Source of the DNA: Macrostomum lignano
Taxonomy: Eukaryota
Assembly (NCBI GenBank): GCA_002269645.1
Contig: NIVC01000399.1
Span: 62,001-126,000 of the forward strand
Direction: 5' to 3'
Length of the DNA: 64,000 nucleotides
Made by a program: the position numbers and the translations under genes. Shown piece after piece: positions 1 through 14,454 of the stretch. Within the stretch, counting starts at the first letter, position 1. Every line of letters begins with the position of its first letter. The notes under the pieces were generated by a model, which was not told the origin of the DNA, did not search any database, and saw only the letters and a program-made list of their open reading frames with translations.

Positions 1-246
1 CTATCTATCTATCTATCTATCTGTTTAACTGTCTTTCGAAAATATTTCATAGAATAAAATCGCATTAAAGATCAGCCGAATATCAAATGAGGAAAGTCAA
101 ACACAATGAATAAGCCGATTACTTCGAAGTGAAGTCTAGGATTTCCATTAAATCAGTCAGATCATATAAACGGAGATGCCGAAAGCAACAGAGCTACAGT
201 GATAAGGGACTAAAATCTAGACCTCAATTTTCTCCCTGCCATGCAG

Positions 247-347
247 TCTGTTTGAGATCACGCAGTCGCTCTACTGGTCAACCTACGGTCTGGTTGAGCT
301 GAGCAACACAGATCTGGAGTATCAGCACTCATTCACCGAGTTTGTTG
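247..347 (+). CDS. TRPC/TRP-gamma-like channel, pore-helix exon (LFEITQSLYWSTYGLVELSNTDLEYQHSFTEFVG)
   Basis: Acceptor cctgccatgcag at 246, donor G|gtgagt at 348. Translation resembles the TRPC4/5 pore region (LFETLQSLFWSIFGL...HEFTEFVG). Phase-1 end matches the phase-1 start of the 6642 exon. Too short for the ORF track. Confidence 0.93.
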
Positions 348-374
348 GTGAGTTCATAATGGAAGGCTTTTGTT

Positions 375-530
375 TACAAGGTACAAGGTACGAGGTACAA
401 GGTACAAGGTACGAGGTACAAGGTACAAGGTACAAGGTACAAGGTACAAGGTACAAGGTACAAGGTACAAGGTACAAGGTACAAGGTACAAGGTACAAGG
501 TACAAGGTACAAGGTACAAGGTACAAGGTA
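375..530. repeat. 7-bp tandem repeat (TACAAGG)n
   Basis: Directly visible; starts about 25 nt after the TRPC donor at 348. Confidence 0.97.
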
Positions 531-845
531 CGAGCTACAATCAAACTTTGAAACAAATTTTTTATTTACTAGATTTATTGACAACAATTAACTTAGGCAG
601 CATTTATAACAAATAAATATTTATCATAAACATTTTTGAAGCTTTGAGCATAGAGTTAACAATTTTCGGCACATATATACGGATAATTGAAGTGCATTTT
701 GTAAAATGCAAAACTCACCAAACTGAGGTTAGTTTTGCTGATGTTTTCTAGATAGAAGAGCATTGATCAATTTATCAATACACGAAATCTGAGATTTGAC
801 AGATTAAACAGTCTGTAGTCATGAGAACTCAAAGGAATTTGGGTG

Positions 846-1233
846 CTACTCTTTGGCAGCAGCTTTGCGACTGTAACTCTTCGACTGAGGCATCCTTTGA
901 ATGTCTTCGCTCTGTCTGGACTGCAGCGGCCGCGGCGGCGGGGGCGGCGGCGGCGTCTCGCTGGGGTCACCAGCTGGCGGCTCCTGAGGGTCCTCGTACA
1001 CCCCAGAGTCGGTCCTGTTATTAGCAGGCACCGCCGAGGTGGATACAATAGTTGACAAATTGGTCACCTGGGAGGTGAGAGTGTTGTACGAGGCTGGATT
1101 GAAGTAGCCCAGATTCTGGTGCTGCAGCTGGTAGTGATTCTGCTGACGTCTGAGGTTCAGCACGGTGCTGTCTGCGTCCACGGATGACACTGAAGCGTCT
1201 TGAGACACCAGGCGGCTGATGATAAGGGCGTTG
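846..1233 (-). CDS. DSL-like protein, exon 8, cytoplasmic tail ending ...SRKAAAKE*
   Basis: aatttcag acceptor, phase 2, in the frame of ORF 846-1274. The eight exons total 1344 nt (447 aa plus stop) with no internal stop. Confidence 0.8.
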
Positions 1234-1278
1234 CTGAAATTTAAATTGCGATCCATGTAGCTACATGTGCGCATCCGC

Positions 1279-1478
1279 TGCAGAGGGGGCGCCAGCTACA
1301 GAGGGGGCGCCAGCTACAGAGGGGCGCCAGCTGCAGAGGGGCGCCAGCTGCAGAGGGGCGCCAGCTACAGAGGGGGCGCCAGCTACAGAGGGGGCGCCAG
1401 CTACAGAGGGGCGCCAGCTGCAGAGGGGCGCCAGCTGCAGAGGGGCGCCAGCTACAGAGGGGGCGCCAGCTACAGAGG
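1279..1478. repeat. 17-18-bp minisatellite (cagagggggcgccagcta)
   Basis: Visible; fills DSL-like intron 7. Confidence 0.95.
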
Positions 1479-1492
1479 CGCTTCGCTCTCAC

Positions 1493-1596
1493 CTCTCCGA
1501 CGCTTTGCACATCTTGATGGCCACCAGAGCAATGACAGCCAATATGAAAATGCTGGTCATTGAGGAGGCCATCACGGCTATGAAAAGAACGCTGGT
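1493..1596 (-). CDS. DSL-like protein, exon 7, transmembrane helix (TSVLFIAVMASSMTSIFILAVIALVAIKMCK)
   Basis: ttttcgcttcag acceptor, AG|gtgaga donor; hydrophobic run followed by basic stop-transfer residues. Confidence 0.85.
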
Positions 1597-1670
1597 CTGA
1601 AGCGAAAATTTTTTTTAACGTTGAACTGTTGCGACTGACTTCAGCGAATTTACACAAATCTTCAACTCAC

Positions 1671-1774
1671 AGCTTCATCTCTGTTTCGATTGTCGGAATT
1701 GCCATTGCTTGATCCCGCGCCTCCGGGTCCGCTGGTTGGGAATGCCGGTTTCGTGGCCAGCTGGGCTGAGCAGT
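1671..1774 (-). CDS. DSL-like protein, exon 6 (DCSAQLATKPAFPTSGPGGAGSSNGNSDNRNRDEA), last DSL Cys plus short stalk
   Basis: tttccgcag acceptor, GCT|gtgagt donor; phases 1-0. Confidence 0.8.
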
Positions 1775-1822
1775 CTGCGGAAATATGAAAATTTCTACGT
1801 ATGAACTACTCGTTATTCTACT

Positions 1823-1979
1823 TAGGAGTCGACAACCTCCGGCCCGCGAAGCCTCTCTATCGCGCCCTTGGGTCTTTCATCTACTTTCCTTTCTCCCCTT
1901 CTTTCTCCCCTCTCTAGTCCGCAGTCATGTGCTAGATTCTACATCTAGCCCTTAAATTAAAAAAGCTTGCCAACCCCTG
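1823..1979. mobile_element. hAT-like MITE (about 157 bp)
   Basis: Left end taggagtcgacaacct vs reverse complement of right end caggggttggcaagct (11/16 match). Flanking 8-mers attctact / atttaact (6/8) look like a decayed 8-bp TSD. Confidence 0.6.
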
Positions 1980-2004
1980 ATTTAACTGATTCTACCCCTC
2001 AGAA

Positions 2005-2335
2005 TGCACCCACCTCACTCAGCGTCAATTCCTGCCCCTACGAGTATAGACCAACCACCTAACTCCGCGTCGATTCCCGACCATCCACCTCACTCCGCGT
2101 CGATTCCTACCCCTCAAGACCACCCACCTCACTCCGCGTCGATTCCTACCCCTCAAGACCACCCACCTCACTCCGCGTCGATTCCTACCCCTCAAGACCA
2201 CCCACCTCACTCCGCGTCGATTCCTACCCTCAAGACCACCCACCTCACTCCGCGTCGATTCCTACCCCTCAAGACCACCCACCTCACTCCGCGTCGATTC
2301 CTACCCCTCAAGACCACCCACCTCACTCCGCCCAT
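2005..2335. repeat. 39-bp minisatellite (ccacctcactccgcgtcgattcctacccctcaagaccac)
   Basis: Visible; 13-aa periodicity in overlapping ORFs. Confidence 0.95.
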
Positions 2336-2382
2336 CACCCCCACAGAGTAGCCTAGCTAAAAACATAGCACACCAATCTCAC

Positions 2383-2510
2383 CAATTGTTTCATCGCATC
2401 GCAACAGACCCTCCGAATCGCAGCAGCAGCCTCGCTGCGGTTCGCAGCGCACGTCGCAGCCTCTGCCGTAGAATCCGGGACTGCACTCGATCCAGACTGA
2501 GATGCGCATT
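2383..2510 (-). CDS. DSL-like protein, exon 5, DSL motif (ECSPGFYGRGCDVRCEPQRGCCCDSEGLLRCDETI)
   Basis: Matches the DSL pattern CxxxYYGxxCxxxCxP...CxxxGxxxC; splice phases 2-1. Confidence 0.85.
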
Positions 2511-2597
2511 CTGTTTTTTTGAAAAAAATAAATATTTTTAAACTGCTGGTGTCTCGTAGTCAGTAACTTTGCTTCGACATCCAAAGCTTTTTCTCAC

Positions 2598-2872
2598 CTG
2601 ATTGACTCTGGAGAATGAATTGGCTGCATCGACAGTACGGCTGGATTACCTTTCATTGAGGATGGGTGAATAACCAGCTGGCCCTTACTAAAGCTTCCAA
2701 TATCTTGATTAACGCTTAAACTACTGTTGGTATCCATGGCAACGGTAGTAGTCGTCTTAGTAGGGATAAACTCGGCGATTGGGATGGTGATATTCAATTG
2801 GAACCTTGCTATTAAATCTGTTGGCGAAGAGTACAGACAGTCTGAGATGCTAATGCGGACCTCGGCCCAGCT
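2598..2872 (-). CDS. DSL-like protein, exon 4 (SWAEVRISISDCLYSSPTDLIARF...PESIR)
   Basis: ctttcttttacag acceptor, AG|gtgaga donor; contains ORF 2594-2797; phases 0-2. Confidence 0.8.
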
Positions 2873-2904
2873 CTGTAAAAGAAAGAGGCATTGAAAGTGT
2901 CCTC

Positions 2905-3285
2905 AGATAGCCCACCCCATTCCACCGTTATTTCTTGCCCCTCACTGCGCCCCCACTCCCCCGTTATTTCCTACCCTCACTGCGCCCCCACTCCCCTGTT
3001 ATTTCCTACCCTCACTGCGCCCCCACTCCCCCGTTATTTCCTACCCTCACTGCGCCCCCACTCCCCCGTTATTTCTTGCCCCTCACAGCGCCCCCACTCC
3101 CCGTTATTTCCTACCCTAACTGCGCCCCCACTCCCCCGTTTTTTCTTGCCCCTCACTGCGCCCCACTTCTCCGTTATTTCTTGCCCCTCACTGCGCCCCC
3201 ACTCCACCGTTATTTCCTACCCTCACTGCGCCCCATTCCCCCGTTATTTCCACTCCTCCCTTTTTCTTGCCCCTCACTGCGCCCA
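2905..3285. repeat. 34-35-bp minisatellite (ccctcactgcgcccccactccccgttatttc...)
   Basis: Visible; fills DSL-like intron 3. Confidence 0.93.
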
Positions 3286-3372
3286 CCCCATTTGTTATTG
3301 TTCAGCTGCATTTAGACACCTATTTCATAGCCTCTAAAATTTATTCTAAATGAAAAATGATAAAAATCTTAC

Positions 3373-3493
3373 GGGCATCGGACCGTCTCGACTTTTGATT
3401 GGTTTGGCTAGCTCTGGCAGTCTTGACACTTCGTCTGGGAAGTAGACTCGCTCCTCGTTGCTTAGACAGGGGCTAGTGACTCGAATGTCTGGT
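3373..3493 (-). CDS. DSL-like protein, exon 3 (GPDIRVTSPCLSNEERVYFPDEVSRLPELAKPIKSRDGPMP)
   Basis: cattcag acceptor, CCC|gtaaga donor; phases 2-0 fit both neighbours. Confidence 0.8.
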
Positions 3494-3627
3494 CTGAATG
3501 AATAAGTTGAATCTAATTTCATTCAAAAATATTTTCGGTCGTGCACGGAATCGAATGAGGATACTTTGGCTTGAAAGTCGATTGGGAGCGCAAACCTTGG
3601 GTCATAGACAGTTTTCAATGTACTCAC

Positions 3628-3752
3628 CCGCCCCAGATGGCGGCAACATCAAAGGACGGATCGCAAGGCGACCTCATTGAGTCGCAGCTAGCTCCGCTGA
3701 TTCTCAGGTTGGCCAAATTTTCATAACTGATCAGACGGAGGACCAGCCTGGC
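3628..3752 (-). CDS. DSL-like protein, exon 2 (ARLVLRLISYENLANLRISGASCDSMRSPCDPSFDV), C2/MNNL-like N-terminus
   Basis: AG/GT boundaries (acaatag, GG|gtgagt), open in phase. Pattern resembles the first strands and Cys pair of the Notch-ligand N-terminal C2 domain. Confidence 0.8.
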
Positions 3753-3789
3753 CTATTGTACGCGACAGGTGTGAATTAGAAACATTTTA

Positions 3790-4585
3790 GCTCAGACTCT
3801 CAGTCTCACTTTTCCCTGCTGACTGACTCTCAGTCTCACTTTTCCCTGCTGACTGACTCTCAGTCTCACTTTCCCTGCTGACTGACTCTCAGTCTCACTT
3901 TCCCTGCTGACTGACTCTCAGTCTCACTTTCCCTGCTGACTGACTCTCAGTCTCACTTTCCCTGCTGACTGACTCTCAGTCTCACTTTCCCTGCTGACTC
4001 TCAGCTCCTATCTCACTTTTCCCTCCTGAGACTCTGTTTCTGTCTCACATTTATTCCTGAAAAAAAATCTGACTTTTAACTAATTCCATATTTCCACTGA
4101 ATCTCAGTCTCCTGACTCTCCTGACTTTACACCCTGACTATTTTCATTCCTGACTCTCGCCTGACTCTCCACTTCTGACTTTCTCCACTTCTGATTCTCA
4201 CAAACCCTGACTCTATTCTACCCCTGACTCTCTCCACCCCTGACTCTCTCCACCCCTGACTCTCTCCACCCTTGACTCTCTACACCCCTGACTCCCTCCA
4301 CCCCTGGCTCTATTCTACCCCTGACTCTCTCCACCCTGACTCTCTCCACCCTGACTCGCTCCACCCTTGACTCTCTTCACCCCTGACTCTCTCCACCCCT
4401 GACTCTCTAAACCCCTGACTCTCTACACCCTGACTCGCTCCACCCTTGACTCTCTAAACCCCTGACTCTCTAAACCCCTGACTCTCTCCACCCCTGACTC
4501 TCTAAACCCCTGACTCTCTCCACCCCTGACTCTCTCCACCCCTGACTCTCTAAACCCCTGACTCTCTCCACCCCTGACTCCCTGA
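3790..4585. repeat. Two adjacent CTGACTC-core arrays (about 29-30-bp, then 16-17-bp units)
   Basis: Visible; fill DSL-like intron 1. Confidence 0.92.
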
Positions 4586-4602
4586 CAGTCTGTTTAACTT
4601 AC

Positions 4603-4701
4603 CGACGAGTTAGCAGCCACTTGATGATGCTGAAGAACAAGTCCGTTGATAAGAAGAACGATAACAGAAAACTGTTGCAACAGCAGAGGCAAGTTCTTCA
4701 T
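4603..4701 (-). CDS. DSL/Notch-ligand-like TM protein, exon 1 (signal peptide MKNLPLLLQQFSVIVLLINGLVLQHHQVAANSS)
   Basis: ATG at 4701, hydrophobic leader, donor TCG|gtaagt; 99 nt, phase 0. Confidence 0.8.
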
Positions 4702-5364
4702 CGCGCTGTGAAGCAGTACCAGCTTCCGTAGTGCCAAGATATTCTAGAAATTCCCAGCACTGACCACTCGAAAATATCGCACCGCTGCATAAGGCCTTGT
4801 CATCCTGTTCAAGTTGATAAATATGCGAGTTTCGTCACACTAAAACTTGGATTGCTATAATTAACATGCCCTTTGTTTACATTAGTAATGAACAAGCTAG
4901 GTCAACCCACTCCATGGATGGACATTTGCAACTGTCATGGTGTTCTAATATTCAATGTCTGGTTAGGGACACGGAGAAATTCTGATGATAAATATTTGAT
5001 GATTAGGCTTATAAGATCAGGGTTCAAAGTTTGCAGCGACTGTACGCAGCTACTGTTTAGTTTCGTAAACGCTTTAAAGTGTTTATAAAAGCAGTTTTTG
5101 TTTCCGGTGCTTTTCTGCAACTTATCAGAAATAATAGCAAGCAATGCACATCCAGTTCATGTCCTCAGATGACTTTTTTCCTACCAATAAAAGTAAATGC
5201 CGTAACTGTTAATTTTAATCTTGCAGTTGGGTGGTTGACGGGACAAATAAATAAGATATGATTCGTGTTTTTCCACAGAGCCAATGGTTGCATGCTAATT
5301 GACTTACTTTATCACAGGATTGTGTAGGTGGCAGATTTAGGTTGGCGGGGGTGGATGAGAGAAT

Positions 5365-6360
5365 AATTGAGATTAGAGACTTGGGGTCAGATTAGATTAG
5401 ATACTTTGGGTGAGATTAGATTAGAGACTTTGGGTGAGATTAGATTAGAGACTTTGGGTGAGATTAGATTAGAGACTTGGGGTCAGATTAGATTAGATAC
5501 TTTGGGTGAGATTAGATTAGAGACTTTGGGTGAGATTAGATTAGAGACTTTGGGTGAGATTAGATTAGATACTTTGGGTGAGAATAGATTAGAGACTTTG
5601 GGTGAGATTAGATTAGAGACTTTGGGTGAGATTAGATTAGAGACTTTGGGTGAGATTAGATTAGAGACTTGGGGTGAGATTAGATTCGAGGCTTTGGGTG
5701 AGATTAGATTAGAGACTTTGGGTGAGATTAGATTAGAGACTTGGGGTGAAACTAGATTAGAGACTTTGGGTGAGATTAGATTAGAGACTTTGGGTGAGAT
5801 TAGATTAGAGACTTGGGTGAGACTAGATTAGAGACTTTGGGTGAGATTAGATTAGATACTTTGGATGAAATTAGATTAGAGACTTCGGTTGAAATTAGAT
5901 TAGAGACTTTGGGTAAGATTATATTAGAGACTTCGGTGAGATTAGATTAGAGACTTTGGGTAAGATTATATTAGAGACTTCGGTGAGATTAGATTAGAGA
6001 CTTTGGGTAAGATTAGATTAGAGACTTCGGTGAGATTAGATTAGAGACTTTGGGTAAGATTAGATTAGAGACTTCGGTGAGATTAGATTAGAGACTTTGG
6101 GTAAGATTAGATTAGAGACTTTGGGTGAGATTAGATTATATTACTTTGGGTGAGATTAGATTAGAGACTTTGGGTGAGATTAGATTAGAGACTTTTCAGT
6201 GAGATTAGATTAGAGACGTTTAAGTGAGATTAAATTAGAGACGTTTAAGTAAGATTAGATTAGAGACTTTGAGTGAGATTAGATTAGAGATTCTGAGTAA
6301 GAGAGTGAGATTAGACTAGAGACCCTGGGTGAGAGAGATTAGATTAGATTAGATTAGAGA
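5365..6360. repeat. 24-bp minisatellite (gagattagattagagactttgggt)
   Basis: Visible; 8-aa periodicity in ORF 5367-5831. Confidence 0.96.
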
Positions 6361-6641
6361 TTCTGTACCAAGCTGAAACTAAGCTCATTAAGGTTTAGTC
6401 CTATTTGACCGGGCATCCGTGAATACTATGGATTGAAATTGAGACCCAAGTTCGATTCCTAGGAATTTGAAGAAACAGAAATTGCAGTAGAAATGCAACT
6501 GCGGGTTTGCTGCTTAAGGTATATATATCAGCATTTTTAGCTGACACAGTTGTGCATTTATTTGCTCTTGGTTTTGTAAACTACTGCTAGTAATATATGC
6601 AATCAAAAAGGCAAAACCGTTCATTTTCTTCATTTCCGCAG

Positions 6642-6736
6642 GCAAACTGATGTACGGCGTGTTCTCAGCAATCACGTTTGTTGTCCTGCTGAACATGCTC
6701 ATCGCCATGATGAACTGCAGCTATGAGTTTATCGCG
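6642..6736 (+). CDS. TRPC-like channel, S6 exon (GKLMYGVFSAITFVVLLNMLIAMMNCSYEFIA)
   Basis: Acceptor ttccgcag at 6641, donor GCG|gtgcgt at 6737. LLNMLIAMM is the TRPC S6 signature. Confidence 0.95.
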
Positions 6737-6747
6737 GTGCGTGACAT

Positions 6748-7765
<1,018 letters not shown>

Positions 7766-8199
7766 TCCTCCTATTCCTTCCTAGAAACTATTTATTCCTC
7801 AACAGGAGTTTATCAGTCCTTTTTCTTCACTGTCTTATAAACGGTACAAAAATCAGCATGCTTCATCACATCGCATAAAATAAAGATAAAGGTATTCCAG
7901 CTTCTAAACACATTTAAAAAGGTTGATCATAATATGTCTTCAGCTTGAATCAAAAAAACTTTCGCGCCTCTTTACCTCTCAACATTTGACCTTTTTCTAA
8001 GTCTTCTAATGCAGCGGTTTTGTAAATATTTACTTCGAAGCCAATATAGCCAAGGAAATAAGACTTTTGCATCTCTTTGAAAAGAGGATAACCCACTGGC
8101 AGACGAACCAAACTGAAGTTGAAAACTGTTTTATAAATCCTAAGATTGTAATCCTAACTAATCCCTGATATCTGTTGTCGAACCGTGATTTTTAATGAT

Positions 8200-9170
8200 C
8201 TGACACCTCCCTGTCAAACAGTGAATTCATTCACCTGACACCTCCCTGTGAAACAGTGAATTCACCCAATCTGACACCTCCCTCTCAAACAGTGAATTTA
8301 CCTATCTGACACCTCCCTGTCAAACAGTGAATTCACCCAATCTGACACCTCCCTCTCAAACAGTGAATTCACCCAATCTGACACCTCCCTCTCAAACAGT
8401 GAATTCACCCAATCTGACACCTCCCTCTCAAACAGTGAATTCACCCAATCTGACACCTCCCTCTCAAACAGTGAATTTACCTATCTGACACCTCCCTGTC
8501 AAACAGTGAATTCACCCATCTGACACCTCCCTCTCAAACAGTGAATTTACCTATCTGACACCTCCCTCTCAAACAGTGAATTCACCTATCTGACACCTCC
8601 CTCTCAAACAGGGAATTCACCTATCTGACACCTCCCTCTCAAACAGTGAATTCACCCATCTGACACCTCCCTCTCAAACAGGGAATTCACCCATCTGACA
8701 CCTCCCTCTCAAACAGTGAATTCACCCATCTGACACCTCCCTCTCAAACAGTGAATTCATCCATCTGACACCTCCCTCTCAAACAGTGAATTCACCCAAT
8801 CTGACACCTCCCTCTCAAACAGTGAATTCACCCATCTGACACCTCCCTCTCAAACAGTGAATTCACCCAATCTGACACCTCCCTCTCAAACAGGGAATTC
8901 ACCCATCTGACACCTCCCTCTCAAACAGTGAATTCACCCATCTGACACCTCCCTCTCAAACAGTGAATTCACCCAATCTGACACCTCCCTCTCAAACAGG
9001 GAATTCACCCATCTGACACCTCCCTCTCAAACAGGGAATTCACCCATCTGACACCTCTCTCTCAAACAGTGAATTCACCCATCTGACACCTCCCTCTCAA
9101 ACAGTGAATTCATCCATCTGACACCTCCCTCTCAAACAGGGAATTCACCCATCTGACACCTCCCTGTCAA
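8200..9170. repeat. 35-36-bp minisatellite (tctgacacctccctctcaaacagtgaattcaccca)
   Basis: Visible. Units are near-identical with no unique spacers, so not CRISPR. Confidence 0.96.
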
Positions 9171-9199
9171 GCAGTGTCTCCCCTGCCCTGCCCCCGCAG

Positions 9200-9394
9200 A
9201 TGCAATCGGACACAGAGTGGAAGTTCGCCCGCAGCAAGCTGTGGATCAGCTACTTCGAAGAGGGCGGCACCCTGCCAGTGCCGTTCAACATCGTGCCCAG
9301 TCCGAAGACTTTCCTGTACGCGCTGTACTGGCTGAAGGACAAACTGTGCTCCTGTTCTAAGAAACATCAGCGCAGCAAGTGGCAAAGCATTCGG
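9200..9394 (+). CDS. TRPC-like channel, TRP-box exon ([34 protein letters not shown])
   Basis: EWKFAR TRP box and [12 protein letters not shown] box 2. Acceptor cccccgcag at 9199, donor CGG|gtaaaa at 9395; 195 nt, phase 0-0. Confidence 0.96.
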
Positions 9395-9494
9395 GTAAAA
9401 ATTCACACTTTTTTCATTTCTAATTTTCAAATCCTATCAATAAATTTATTGGCTTGACGAAACCTGAGTATTGTTTTTTATTAACTATTTTCAG

Positions 9495-9955: not shown

Positions 9956-9997
9956 TATATCCCAATAAGCGCTTACGCAACTCGCATTCTTCCTCAG

Positions 9998-10181
9998 TCG
10001 GTCATGCGCTCCCTCGTCAAGCGCTACCTGGCAGCCCGGCAGAGATCCGATGAGAAGCAGGGCGTCACGGAAGACGACCTGAACGAAATCAAAGGCGACA
10101 TCAGCGCATTCAGATTCGAGCTGCTTGAGATTCTGCGAACGAATGGAATGAAAACGCCAGCTTATACCGAACAGCGTTCGA
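9998..10181 (+). CDS. TRPC-like channel, C-terminal coiled-coil exon (SVMRSLVKRY...TEDDLNEIKGDISAFRFELL)
   Basis: Conserved TRPC rib-helix/coiled-coil motif. Acceptor cttcctcag at 9997, donor A|gtgagt at 10182. Confidence 0.93.
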
Positions 10182-10204
10182 GTGAGTGGCGGTTATTTTC
10201 TGAT

Positions 10205-12505: not shown

Positions 12506-12904
12506 CAAGTTATTTTCAGCCTTTGCTAAAACTGTTTTTGTAGCTCAGTTCAGCTTTTCTGCTTAGCAAACAAAAATCATCAGAAAAAAAGACTTTGTTT
12601 AAACTTTCTTATAAAGCTTCAAAAATAGAAGCCGACGGCACATTGTACACTGAAATAACAGATAAAAAATCAGCAGGTATTATATTTTTGGCTTCTTGCC
12701 AGCATAAAAGTAGGTAAGGCAAAAGACTTTGTCAATAGTGAACTCATACAGAAGCTATTTTAGCACGTGATTCTTGCAGCGCAGCGATAAAACACTCGCT
12801 GATTTCGAAATTGCACTTGAAAAGTTTCTGCACTGTGAGAAAGTGCGATAAGAAATGGGTGCTTATTGAGAACTGATGGAGAAGAGAGCGGACTGGGGTT
12901 TGGA

Positions 12905-14090
12905 AAAGAAGCGGAAAAGGCAGCGGAGAAGAGAGCGGAGAAGAGAGCGGAGAAGAGAGCGGAGAAGAGAGCGGAGAAGAGAGCGGAGAAGAGAGCGGAG
13001 AAGAGAGCGGAGAAGAGAGCGGAGAAGAGAGCGGAGAAGGGAGCGGAGAAGAGAGCGGAGAAGAGTGCGGAGAAGAGAGCGGAGAAGAGAGCGGAGAAGA
13101 GAGCGGAGAAGGGAGAAGAGTGAGGAGAAGAGAGCGGAGAAGAGAGCGGAGAAGAGAGCAGAGAAGGGAGAAGAGTGCGGAGAAGAGAGCGGAGAAGAGT
13201 GCGGAGAAGAGTGCGGAGAAGAGAGCGGAGAAGGGAGAAGAGAGCAGAGAAGAGTGCGGAGAAGAGAGCGGAGAAGAGAGCGGAGAAGGGAGAAGAGTGA
13301 GGAGAAGAGTGCGGAGAAGAGAGCGGAGAAGGGAGAAGAGTGCGGAGAAGAAAGCGGAGAAGGGAGAAGAGTGAGGAGAAGAGTGCGGAGAAGAGAGCGG
13401 AGAAGGGAGAAGAGTGTGGAGAAGAGAGCGGAGAAGAGAGCGGAGAAGAGAGCGGAGAAGGGAGAAGAGAGCGGAGAAGAGAGCGGAGAAGGGAGAAGAG
13501 AGCGGAGAAGAGAGCGGAGAAGGGAGAAGAGAGCGGAGAAGAGAGCGGAGAAGAGAGCGGAGAAGAGAGCGGAGAAGGGAGAAGAGTGAGGAGAAGAGAG
13601 CGGAGAAGAGAGCGGAGAAGAGAGCGGAGAAGAGAGCGGAGAAGGGAGAAGAGTGAGGAGAAGAGAGTGGAGAAGAGAGCGGAGAAGAGAGCGGAGAAGA
13701 GTGCGGAGAAGAGAGCGGAGAAGAGAGCAGAGAAGAGTGCAGAGAAGAGTGCGGAGAAGAGAGCAAAGAAGGGAGAAGAGTGAGGAGAAGAGAGCGGAGA
13801 AGAGAGCGGAGAAGAGAGCGGAGAAGAGAGCGGAGAAGAGAGCGGAGAAGAGTGCGGAGAAGGGAGAAGAGTGAGGAGAAGAGAGCGGAGAAGAGAGCGG
13901 AGAAGAGAGCGGAGAAGAGAGCGGAGAAGAGAGCGGAGAAGAGAGCGGAGAAGAGAGAAGAGAAGAGTGCGGAGAAGAGTGCGGAGAAGAGAGCGGAGAA
14001 GAGAGCGGAGAAGAGAGCGGAGAAGAGAGCGGAGAAGAGTGCGGAGAAGAGAGCGGAGAAGAGAGCGAAGAAGGCAGCGGAGAAGGCAGT
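12905..14090. repeat. 12-bp minisatellite (gaagagagcgga)
   Basis: Visible. Confidence 0.97.
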
Positions 14091-14454
14091 AGATGCAAAA
14101 CCATGGGCTAAACCTATGCTTGGCAAATTTACAATGCAAAAAACTTAGTGCTGGCAAACTGGCATCACCCACCACGTGCTCGAGCGAGCAACTGTAGCCC
14201 TCAGCCGCCTGTACTCTGGAGCAAATACGGGCGTATGCGTGTTACCTTGGCATGAGAATACAATTTTCATTATTGATCCACGCACATCTAGGCACGCGCT
14301 GTTTCTATTTTTAGCTCCGACTGATGTGAAGCGTGCACGCGCTTGATGCATGATGGGGGTCTACAATGCTTCCAGTCTGCATAGCATTGAGAGTGCGGTA
14401 GAGGTTGGAGAGACTGGGGTGCGGTGTGTGACAGAAAATTGGGACAGATAAGTC

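What the first reader, a model, noticed from the sequence alone, without database searches (positions are those of the whole stretch)
846..4701. EGF-less DSL/Notch-ligand-like membrane protein with a receptor-style tail
Seen: eight exons splice in phase to 447 aa: signal peptide, C2/MNNL-like region, DSL-like Cys motif, ~35-aa stalk, TM helix, and ~135-aa tail containing DSGVYEDP followed by TPPPPPPPRP. Established: Delta/Serrate ligands carry EGF repeats between DSL and TM and usually end in a PDZ-binding motif; YxxP and PxxP/polyproline are SH2 and SH3/EVH1 docking motifs. Inference: a minimal ligand, decoy or Notch-independent receptor that signals inward through adaptors such as Nck or Crk. 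The ORF track misses it because the exons are short.
Basis: partly seen in the sequence, partly recalled or inferred. Interest (0 to 1): 0.75.

Follow-up and report, generated by a model that had tools for sequence, protein, structure and literature searches.

The report
EGF-less Delta-like flatworm membrane protein
This is a real, already annotated but unstudied gene of the flatworm Macrostomum lignano. It encodes a single-pass membrane protein that keeps only the N-terminal tip (C2-like plus DSL-like) of a Delta/Serrate Notch ligand, has no EGF repeats, and carries a conserved adaptor-docking tail, so it is a curious stripped-down offshoot of the ligand family and probably not a working Notch ligand.

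Summary
Eight minus-strand exons (4701-846) with GT/AG boundaries splice in frame to 447 aa. The same boundaries on the NCBI M. lignano contig reproduce the deposited, transcriptome-guided protein BOX15_Mlig009932g1 exactly.

The protein has a signal peptide, a ~180-aa Cys-bearing N-domain, a six-Cys DSL-like knot, a 33-aa stalk, a TM helix and a 137-aa tail. No EGF-like pattern exists in any frame of the locus.

- **Pfam:** nothing for the window protein. A 28%-identical paralog (Mlig032942) with the same architecture hits Pfam DSL below threshold (E 0.006).
- **PDB:** the two-sequence family profile finds only Drosophila Delta and human DLL1, at their DSL domains.
- **hhalign against seven solved C2-DSL ligands:** colinear, P 1e-9. 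The DSL part alone scores 36, against a maximum of 18.7 in 200 shuffles. The N-domain is weaker (P 3e-4).
- **AlphaFold:** models were too poor to decide the fold.
- **Notch-binding face of the DSL:** lost (0 of 5 residues).
- **Tail:** the most conserved block of the protein is YExP followed 16-17 aa later by PxxPxR.

No relatives were found outside M. lignano. Both paralogs sit antisense in the same intron of paralogous TRPC-like channel genes.

Verdict: a new variant of a known kind. Function is untested.

The parts
4603..4701 (-). Exon 1: start codon (4701-4699) and signal-peptide-like N-terminus (aa 1-33).
   Evidence: Hydrophobic segment aa 4-24. 100% identical in L002.
3628..3752 (-). 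Exon 2: start of the N-domain (aa 34-75), RLxxYEN...CDS...CDPxF...WG. This is the part that aligns to the first strands and cysteines of the ligand C2/MNNL domain.
   Evidence: Acceptor caatAG and donor GTGAGT. hhalign family 6-56 against C2 3-57, score 30.6, P 3e-4; shuffles mean 12.7, max 26.
3373..3493 (-). Exon 3: N-domain (aa 75-115), with the conserved Cys84.
2598..2872 (-). Exon 4: rest of the N-domain (aa 116-207), with the conserved IxDC (Cys127) and a ~27-aa insert absent from the paralog.
2383..2510 (-). Exon 5: DSL-like six-Cys module (aa 207-250): C216-x8-C225-x3-C229-x7-C237-x7-C245-x5-C251, with FYG.
   Evidence: hhalign against the DSL of seven solved ligands: score 36.0, P 4e-8, 0 of 200 shuffles reach it. 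PDB profile hits are only Delta 7alk and DLL1 4xbm, at their DSL.
1671..1774 (-). Exon 6: last DSL cysteine (C251) and the low-complexity stalk (aa 250-284).
1493..1596 (-). Exon 7: transmembrane helix (about aa 285-310) and the basic juxtamembrane stop-transfer residues.
   Evidence: Kyte-Doolittle 19-residue window peak of 2.41 at aa 284-319. AlphaFold helix 279-315.
846..1233 (-). Exon 8: cytoplasmic tail (aa 319-447) and stop codon TAG (848-846).
927..1010 (-). Conserved tail cassette (aa 394-421): DSGVYEDPQEP ... PPPPPPPRP, that is YExP followed 17 aa later by PxxPxR.
   Evidence: Block aa 391-421 is 50% identical to the paralog, against 19% for the rest of the tail. Both motifs and their spacing are kept.
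247..349 (+). Context: pore-region exon of the host TRPC-like channel gene (LFEITQSLYWSTYGLVELSNTDLEYQHSFTEFVG). The DSL-like gene lies antisense in the intron that follows it.
   Evidence: 88% identical to the equivalent exon at the paralogous locus L001 16058-15957.
9194..9400 (+). Context: TRP-box exon of the host channel gene ([10 protein letters not shown]...). It closes the intron that contains the DSL-like gene.
   Evidence: tblastx against L001 8112-7906, 83% identity. The L001 gene carries Pfam Ion_trans and YVC1_C.
9995..10186 (+). Context: next exon of the host channel gene (VMRSLVKRYL...VTEDDLNEIKGDISAFRFELLEIL).
   Evidence: tblastx against L001 7374-7183, 86% identity.

Best explanation
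The locus encodes a type I single-pass membrane protein, M. lignano Mlig009932. It descends from the N-terminal receptor-binding module of a Delta/Serrate-type ligand (a C2/MNNL-like beta domain followed by a DSL knot) and has no EGF repeats, so that module sits on a ~33-residue stalk close to the membrane.

The DSL face that canonical ligands use to bind Notch EGF11-12 is not kept. The cytoplasmic tail lacks the usual ligand features I looked for (an NxxN-type or PDZ-type motif). Its best-conserved element is instead a YExP tyrosine followed 16-17 residues later by a class II PxxPxR polyproline.

The most likely mode of action is a fast-evolving, lineage-specific cell-surface recognition molecule. 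The C2-DSL tip would bind a membrane or protein partner. The tail, once tyrosine-phosphorylated, would recruit SH2/SH3 adaptors or kinases of the Abl/Crk/Nck type, giving inward ('reverse') signalling in the manner of ephrin-B rather than Notch trans-activation.

Shown: the gene model, the architecture, DSL homology, absence of EGF, motif conservation, and restriction to M. lignano in the databases searched.

Inferred: the C2 fold, the binding partner, phosphorylation, and adaptor recruitment.
For: - **Gene model:** it equals the deposited transcript-based protein (PMC5730564).
- **Paralog:** P0019 (Mlig032942, 28% identity, E 3.5e-15 in a library of 1.84 billion proteins) has the same architecture, the same ten conserved cysteines, and 6 of 7 shared intron positions.
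- **PDB:** the family profile finds only Delta 7alk (E 0.0057) and DLL1 4xbm (E 0.011), both at the DSL. P0019 alone finds the Delta, Jagged-1 and Jagged-2 DSL.
- **Pfam:** DSL is the only family hit for P0019 (E 0.0063, below the cut-off).
- **hhalign against seven solved C2-DSL sequences:** global and colinear, Prob 96%, P 1e-9. DSL alone P 4e-8, with shuffles reaching at most 18.7 against 36.0. N-domain P 3e-4 with z about 5.8. Cross-domain controls give P 0.3-0.4. The match to EGF1 is weaker (19.5 over 12 columns).
- **No EGF:** no EGF pattern in any frame of the locus.
- **Tail:** the cassette is 50% identical against 19% for the rest of the tail, with spacing conserved.
- **Fold hint:** the low-confidence P0019 ectodomain model is all-beta with about nine strands before the DSL, and its non-significant top Foldseek hits are C2 domains.
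- **Specificities (established knowledge, not tested here):** SH2 domains of Abl, Crk and Nck prefer pY-x-x-P. Class II SH3 ligands are PxxPxR.
Against: - Pfam MNNL and DSL do not hit the window protein, and the paralog's DSL hit is below Pfam's cut-off.
- The C2 assignment rests on about 50 aligned residues and colinearity.
- Both AlphaFold models are of low confidence (pLDDT 31 and 50), and no Delta or Jagged structure appears among the Foldseek hits.
- The family profile has only two independent sequences.
- The last DSL loop lacks GWxG and is shorter than in canonical ligands.
- I found no expression data, interaction data or phosphorylation data.
- Short linear motifs such as YxxP and PxxPxR arise easily in proline-rich disordered tails, and conservation across just two paralogs is a small sample.
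- Loss of the canonical Notch-binding face does not exclude binding to a co-evolved flatworm Notch.
Confidence: 0.6

Rival explanations
1. It is a true Notch-pathway component: a minimal ligand, cis-inhibitor or decoy. Its membrane-proximal C2-DSL module binds flatworm Notch, in cis or in trans, through a co-evolved interface. In this reading the tail serves endocytosis and trafficking.
For: In canonical ligands C2 plus DSL form the core Notch EGF11-12 binding unit (PMC3415683, and the C2 literature listed). Homology to that unit is supported. The paralog keeps F and R of the FCRP motif. DLL3 sets a precedent for a divergent DSL protein that acts only in cis (PMC2171428 abstract).
Against: Of the conserved face (JAG1 F199, R201, R203, D205, F207), the window protein has R, E, Q, G and a gap (0 of 5) and the paralog keeps 2 of 5. 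There are no EGF1-3/DOS repeats, which contribute to binding in Jagged/DLL1-type ligands. The two paralogs are only 35% identical in the DSL, which fits poorly with one conserved receptor. The most constrained tail element is an SH2/SH3-type cassette, and no NxxN or PDZ-type motif was found.
Confidence: 0.25
2. The DSL and C2 resemblance is convergent or compositional. The protein would then be an unrelated lineage-specific Cys-containing membrane protein, and the UniRef 'DSL' name a false positive of an automatic rule.
For: There is no Pfam hit for the window protein. The PDB E-values are marginal (0.006-0.011). The profile is built from two sequences. The structure prediction is inconclusive.
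Against: Column shuffles that keep the composition never approach the observed DSL score (maximum 18.7 against 36.0, n=200), nor the N-domain score (maximum 26 against 30.6, n=60). The loop lengths x8, x3 and x7 match canonical DSL, and the YYG/FYG and FCRP motifs are in register. Among 177,635 PDB sequences the only hits are Delta and DLL1, at the right domain. The domain order and the start of the N-domain directly after the signal peptide match the ligands.
Confidence: 0.1
3. It is a decaying remnant of a Delta duplicate that lost its EGF exons. It would be transcribed (perhaps because it sits inside an active channel gene) but without function of its own.
For: Divergence is very fast (28% identity) compared with the host channel exons (83-88%). 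The gene has no relatives outside M. lignano in the libraries searched.
Against: Both paralogs and both alleles keep intact reading frames, splice sites, all ten cysteines, the TM helix and the tail cassette. The tail block is 50% identical although the rest of the tail has drifted to 19%, which points to selection.
Confidence: 0.05

Closest known systems
Canonical DSL Notch ligands (Delta/DLL1/DLL4, Serrate/Jagged1/2)
   Same: Both are type I membrane proteins. An N-terminal domain begins directly after the signal peptide and aligns with the first strands and cysteines of the ligand C2/MNNL domain. A six-Cys DSL-type knot with YYG/FYG follows it, with loop lengths x8, x3 and x7.
   Different: It has zero EGF repeats, against 5-9 in the Delta family and 16 in the Jagged family (PMC3415683). 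The C3-C4 and C5-C6 loops are shorter and lack GWxG. The Notch-binding face is not kept (0 of 5). Pfam thresholds are not reached. The tail has no PDZ-type end and instead carries a conserved YExP-PxxPxR cassette.
C. elegans DSL-1-type minimal ligands
   Same: Both are reduced members of the DSL superfamily with a shortened ectodomain.
   Different: DSL-1 is secreted and still has one EGF repeat (PMC3415683). This protein is membrane-anchored, has none, and has a long tail.
Bivalve DSL-only / tandem-DSL genes
   Same: These genes encode DSL without any EGF domain. They were reported as a separate branch of lophotrochozoan DSL genes (PMC8166818).
   Different: That branch was reported only in bivalves and as DSL or DSL tandem repeats. 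Flatworms were left out of that paper's ligand tree. A C2-like domain, a TM helix and a signalling tail are not described for those genes. No sequence relationship was tested here.
DLL3 (divergent vertebrate DSL ligand)
   Same: It is a DSL-family member with a degenerate DSL that does not trans-activate Notch (PMC2171428 abstract), so it is a precedent for loss of ligand function within the family.
   Different: DLL3 keeps its EGF repeats and acts on Notch in cis. Nothing links the flatworm protein to Notch so far.
Ephrin-B-type reverse signalling (functional analogy only, from general knowledge)
   Same: A membrane-bound 'ligand' whose short cytoplasmic tail carries conserved tyrosines that recruit an SH2/SH3 adaptor (Nck2/Grb4) after phosphorylation.
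   Different: There is no sequence or fold relationship, ephrin-B also ends in a PDZ ligand, and phosphorylation of the flatworm tail is untested.

Membership tests
DSL domain (Pfam PF01414 / PROSITE DSL profile) | Significant match to the curated profile | tested here: not met
   Pfam gives no hit for the window protein, whole or in fragments, even at E<=10. The paralog P0019 hits PF01414 as its only family, but below the cut-off (17.2 bits against 24.2, E 0.0063, first 16 profile positions). UniRef names both proteins 'DSL domain-containing protein'. I infer that this comes from an automatic profile rule, which I could not run.
DSL domain (Pfam PF01414 / PROSITE DSL profile) | Six cysteines with canonical spacing and the CxxxYYGxxCxxFCRP core | tested here: met
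   The window protein has C-x8-C-x3-C-x7-C-x7-C-x5-C with FYG. DLL1 has C-x8-C-x3-C-x11-C-x7-C-x8-C. The paralog carries FYYG and FCRP. hhalign score 36.0, P 4e-8, 0 of 200 shuffles at or above it. Loops 3 and 5 are shorter, and GWxG is absent.
DSL domain (Pfam PF01414 / PROSITE DSL profile) | Consecutive disulfides (C1-C2, C3-C4, C5-C6) and the DSL fold | not testable with these tools
   The DSL region has pLDDT below 50 in both AlphaFold models. The disulfide pattern comes from PMC3415683.
MNNL / ligand C2 domain (Pfam PF07657) | Significant match to the curated profile | tested here: not met
   No Pfam hit for the window protein or for P0019.
MNNL / ligand C2 domain (Pfam PF07657) | Profile-profile similarity to solved ligand C2 domains, in register from the mature N-terminus | tested here: inconclusive
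   Local hhalign gives 51 columns, score 30.6, P 3e-4, Prob 38%. Sixty shuffles give mean 12.7, SD 3.1, maximum 26. The global N-only comparison gives P 0.0018. Three of the four cysteines align with DLL4-type C2 cysteines. The rest of the domain shows no detectable similarity.
MNNL / ligand C2 domain (Pfam PF07657) | Eight-stranded C2 beta-sandwich fold | tested here: inconclusive
   The P0019 ectodomain model (pLDDT 50, pTM 0.50) is all-beta with about nine strands before the DSL. The best Foldseek hits are C2 domains (Munc13-1, E-Syt2, CAPS, cPLA2, Cep120), but none is significant (best E 0.097, TM <= 0.31), and no ligand C2 is among them.
Canonical Delta/Serrate/LAG-2 Notch ligands | One or more EGF-like repeats between the DSL and the membrane | tested here: not met
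   No EGF-type Cys pattern in any frame of window 1-9000. Introns carry at most 2 Cys per open stretch, except one tandem repeat. The transcript-based annotation and the paralog also lack EGF.
Canonical Delta/Serrate/LAG-2 Notch ligands | Conserved Notch-binding face of the DSL (hJAG1 F199, R201, R203, D205, F207) | tested here: not met
   In the hhalign register the window protein has R, E, Q, G and a gap (0 of 5), and the paralog has F, R, L, G and a gap (2 of 5).
Canonical Delta/Serrate/LAG-2 Notch ligands | Binding to and trans-activation of Notch | not testable with these tools
   This needs binding and reporter assays.
Canonical Delta/Serrate/LAG-2 Notch ligands | Ligand-type intracellular motifs (Neuralized NxxN, Mib1 boxes, PDZ ligand in some members) | tested here: not met
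   Neither tail has NxxN. The C-termini ...AAAKE and ...SKPNK do not end in a hydrophobic residue. Mib1 boxes were not tested. The motif definitions come from general knowledge and from PMC3415683 (PDZ).

The most novel reading that the evidence does not exclude
A macrostomid-specific 'C2-DSL receptor': the Notch-ligand tip has been freed from its EGF stalk and re-used as the sensing domain of a Notch-independent receptor that signals through phosphotyrosine and SH3 adaptors. It evolves rapidly (28% identity between paralogs whose host genes are 83-88% identical). Through a gene duplication it has stayed antisense in the same intron of TRPC-like channel genes, which hints at coupled regulation with the channel.
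Probability: 0.3. Interest if true: 0.65.

Novelty: new variant of a known kind. Interest (0 to 1): 0.45.

Why it matters
If the reading is right, it shows that the C2-DSL head of Notch ligands can exist and be kept by selection without any EGF repeat, on a short stalk and with a different kind of tail.

- **For Notch structural biology:** this would be a natural 'minimal module' for asking what C2-DSL can bind on its own (lipid, Notch or something else).
- **For evolution:** it would be an example of a core developmental ligand being re-used as a lineage-specific receptor.
- **For genome annotation:** it would record a case of a nested antisense gene pair preserved through duplication.

The practical reach is limited. 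The family is so far confined to one flatworm species, and nothing is known about its expression or function.

Tried and rejected
- **Pfam:** a scan of the whole protein and of three fragments at E<=10 gave nothing relevant.
- **PDB, single sequence:** phmmer with the window protein gave only low-complexity noise.
- **Large protein searches (three word-indexed and one full HMMER pass over 1.84 billion representatives):** besides one true paralog, they returned only M. lignano entries. Most are fragmentary, frame-shifted gene models of the same gene carrying unrelated UniRef names (WAP, Rho-GAP, Elicitin, CUB and others). No other species appeared.
- **AlphaFold2, full protein with a three-row alignment:** failed (pLDDT 31).
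- **AlphaFold2, paralog ectodomain:** reached only pLDDT 50, and Foldseek against PDB gave no significant match.
- **Expression data:** I looked for Mlig009932 and Mlig032942 in the full text and in the supplements of four M. lignano papers and found nothing.
- **Hidden EGF exons in the repeat-filled introns:** considered and rejected.
- **A second copy elsewhere in the window:** considered and rejected.
- **DSL-like knot as an EGF domain:** considered and rejected, because it matches DSL much better than EGF1.

Full report
**1. The observation**

The region 846-4701 holds a minus-strand gene whose eight exons I rebuilt from the sequence: 4701-4603, 3752-3628, 3493-3373, 2872-2598, 2510-2383, 1774-1671, 1596-1493 and 1233-846. 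Every donor is GT(A/G)AG and every acceptor AG.

One correction: exon 2 must use the acceptor caatAG at 3753/3752. The ccAG 5 nt further on breaks the frame. The introns are almost entirely tandem repeats with periods of 16-39 bp.

The listed features are all present:
- a hydrophobic N-terminus (aa 4-24)
- a Cys-bearing region of about 180 aa
- the knot C216...C251
- a 33-aa low-complexity stalk
- a hydrophobic helix (about aa 285-310)
- a 137-aa tail with DSGVYEDP (394-401) and TPPPPPPPRP (412-421)

**2. Source and independent support for the gene model**

The protein is 99% identical to NCBI BOX15_Mlig009932g1 of the flatworm Macrostomum lignano (P0001, 448 aa). On the NCBI contig NIVC01001748.1 (L002) all eight exons are colinear at 97-100% identity. 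Splicing that contig at the same sites, including the caatAG acceptor, gives P0001 residue for residue.

The Mlig_3_7 annotation was built from a genome-guided RNA-seq assembly (StringTie/TACO plus trans-splicing and poly(A) data; PMC5730564). The junctions therefore rest, indirectly, on transcript evidence. I did not see the reads myself.

The two alleles or copies differ by three synonymous and two non-synonymous codons and one Pro codon.

No EGF-like six-Cys pattern or CxC...GYxGxxC core occurs in any frame of window 1-9000. No open stretch in introns 1-6 has more than two cysteines. The nine cysteines in intron 7 come from a 17-bp repeat. The 'extra EGF exons' refutation is therefore not met.

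**3. Relatives**

I ran one full HMMER pass over 1.84 billion representative proteins and three word-indexed searches of 5.8 billion proteins. One of the three used an ectodomain-only profile, to keep the polyproline tail from flooding the candidate list. Only M. lignano entries came back.

Most are fragmentary or frame-shifted models of the same gene from an older assembly, with unrelated UniRef names.

One is a true paralog: P0019 = BOX15_Mlig032942g1 (404 aa, 28% identity, E 3.5e-15). It aligns end to end and has the same architecture, with no EGF. The conserved features are:
- four cysteines of the N-domain (C56, C63, C84, C127)
- six cysteines of the knot (C216, C225, C229, C237, C245, C251)
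- RLxxYEN, CDS, CDPxF and WG near the N-terminus
- the tail motifs

Its gene has seven exons, and six of the seven intron positions of the window gene are shared. UniRef calls both proteins 'DSL domain-containing protein'.

**4. Is it DSL / C2?**

*Curated profiles.* Pfam finds nothing for the window protein, whole or in pieces. For the paralog the only family is DSL (PF01414), below the cut-off: 17.2 bits against 24.2, E 0.0063, covering the CxxxYYGxxCxxFCRP start.

*PDB.* A profile of the two paralogs searched against 177,635 distinct PDB sequences finds exactly two. These are Drosophila Delta (7alk, E 0.0057) and human DLL1 (4xbm, E 0.011). Both align at the last C2 strand plus the DSL. P0019 alone finds the Delta, Jagged-1 and Jagged-2 DSL weakly.

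*Profile-profile comparison.* I recovered seven verified C2-DSL sequences from PDB alignments: DLL1, rat and human DLL4, Delta, Jagged-1, Jagged-2 and Serrate. I compared profiles with hhalign.

| Comparison | Result |
|---|---|
| Whole ectodomain, global | colinear, 4-222 against 1-205, Prob 96.4%, P 1.1e-9 |
| DSL alone | score 36.0, P 4.3e-8; 200 column shuffles mean 9.8, SD 2.4, max 18.7 |
| N-domain alone | score 30.6, P 3.3e-4, over the first 51 residues; 60 shuffles mean 12.7, max 26 |
| Cross-domain controls | P 0.3-0.4 |
| Family knot against EGF1 profile | score 19.5 over 12 columns |

In the N-domain match, three cysteines fall on C2 cysteines.

*Conclusion on homology.* DSL homology is well supported. 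Homology of the N-domain to the ligand C2/MNNL is plausible but not proven.

*Structure.* Structure prediction did not settle it. The full protein gave pLDDT 31. The paralog ectodomain gave pLDDT 50 and pTM 0.50, an all-beta model with about nine strands before the knot. Foldseek against PDB gave no significant match. The non-significant top of the list is enriched in C2 domains (Munc13-1, E-Syt2, CAPS, cPLA2, Cep120), and no Delta or Jagged structure appears.

**5. What differs from a ligand**

- *EGF repeats.* Canonical ligands have 5-16 EGF repeats, and even secreted C. elegans DSL-1 has one (PMC3415683). This family has none.
- *Notch-binding face.* The conserved DSL face in Jagged-1 is F199, R201, R203, D205 and F207. 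In the hhalign register the window protein has R, E, Q, G and a gap. The paralog has F, R, L, G and a gap.
- *DSL loops.* The C3-C4 and C5-C6 loops are shorter, and the GWxG motif is missing.
- *Tail.* The tails have no NxxN, PPxY or NPxY motif and do not end in a PDZ-type hydrophobic residue.

**6. The tail**

Between the paralogs the tail is 19% identical overall, but block 391-421 is 50% identical. That is the highest of any segment (DSL 35%, N-domain 29%).

The block holds [DE]SxVYExPxEP and, 16-17 residues later, PxxPxR (PPPPPR and PPLPAR). A weaker conserved C-terminal QRxPxSxSxS follows; in the paralog it reads RSFSKP.

From established knowledge, pYxxP is the preferred SH2 motif of the Abl/Crk/Nck/RasGAP group, and PxxPxR is the class II SH3 ligand. 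Phosphorylation and binding remain untested.

**7. Surroundings**

The gene lies antisense inside an intron of a TRPC-like cation channel gene on the plus strand. The channel exons found are:
- pore exon 247-349 (LFEITQSLYWSTYGL...FTEFVG)
- TRP-box exon 9194-9400 ([10 protein letters not shown]...)
- a further exon at 9995-10186

The paralog sits in the same way, between the pore exon (L001 16058-15957) and the TRP-box exon (8112-7906) of the paralogous channel gene, which carries Pfam Ion_trans and YVC1_C.

The host exons are 83-88% identical in protein, and the nested proteins 28%. The simplest reading is one segmental duplication of an already nested pair, followed by much faster evolution of the nested gene.

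**8. Best explanation and rivals**

*Best explanation (about 0.6).* A lineage-restricted, fast-evolving offshoot of the DSL ligand superfamily that keeps a membrane-proximal C2-like plus DSL-like head. It acts as a recognition molecule with inward signalling through the YExP/PxxPxR cassette, and canonical Notch trans-activation is unlikely.

*Rivals.*
- A true Notch cis/trans modulator with a co-evolved interface (about 0.25).
- A chance or convergent resemblance (about 0.1), which the shuffles and the PDB specificity argue against.
- A transcribed but functionless remnant (about 0.05), which the intact frames and the conserved tail block argue against.

**9. Novelty**

The gene is deposited as a hypothetical protein, and UniRef already flags a DSL domain. 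I found no paper that mentions it.

EGF-less DSL genes have been noted in bivalves (PMC8166818). They are described there as DSL-only or tandem-DSL genes, not as this architecture.

I rate it a new variant of a known kind. It is of moderate interest, limited by its narrow distribution and the absence of any functional data.

Noticed in passing
window 247-349, 9194-9400, 9995-10186 (+); L001 16058-15957, 8112-7906, 7374-7183 (-): The DSL-like gene is nested antisense in the intron between the pore exon and the TRP-box exon of a TRPC-like channel gene. Its 28%-identical paralog occupies the same intron of the paralogous channel gene. The host exons are 83-88% identical, so the nested gene has diverged far faster than its host.
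   Followed up: partly
window 375-540, 1277-1478, 2079-2331, 2915-3251, 3795-4029, 4165-4580, 5370-6290, 6749-7765: Nearly all intronic and flanking DNA here is tandem repeat: (TACAAGG)n, units of 17, 39, 35, 29, 16 and 24 bp, and about 254 copies of TCTA. Intron lengths differ between this window and the NCBI contig, while the exons are 97-100% identical.
   Followed up: partly
proteins P0002-P0018 and P0020-P0023 (UniRef / metaclust entries from M. lignano): About twenty database entries are fragmentary or frame-shifted predictions of this same gene from an older assembly. They carry misleading automatic names (WAP, Rho-GAP, Elicitin-like, CUB, GRANULINS, LRRNT, VASt domain-containing and others). 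P0004 fuses the tail to a retroelement-type CCHC/aspartic protease segment.
   Followed up: partly
window 12677-14401 and many long ORFs listed: Most ORFs of 120 aa or more in the 64-kb window overlap on both strands and several fall in tandem-repeat stretches. They were not examined individually. Window 12677-14401 matches L002 1-1708 at 98.6% identity, which places this window on the same stretch as the NCBI contig.
   Followed up: no
window aa 429-440 of the protein (about 870-905, -) and P0019 C-terminus: There is a second, weaker conserved tail element, QRxPxS[KR]S[YF]S[RK]. In the paralog it reads RSFSKP, which fits the mode-1 14-3-3 / basophilic-kinase pattern RSxSxP. The window protein lacks the proline.
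   Followed up: no
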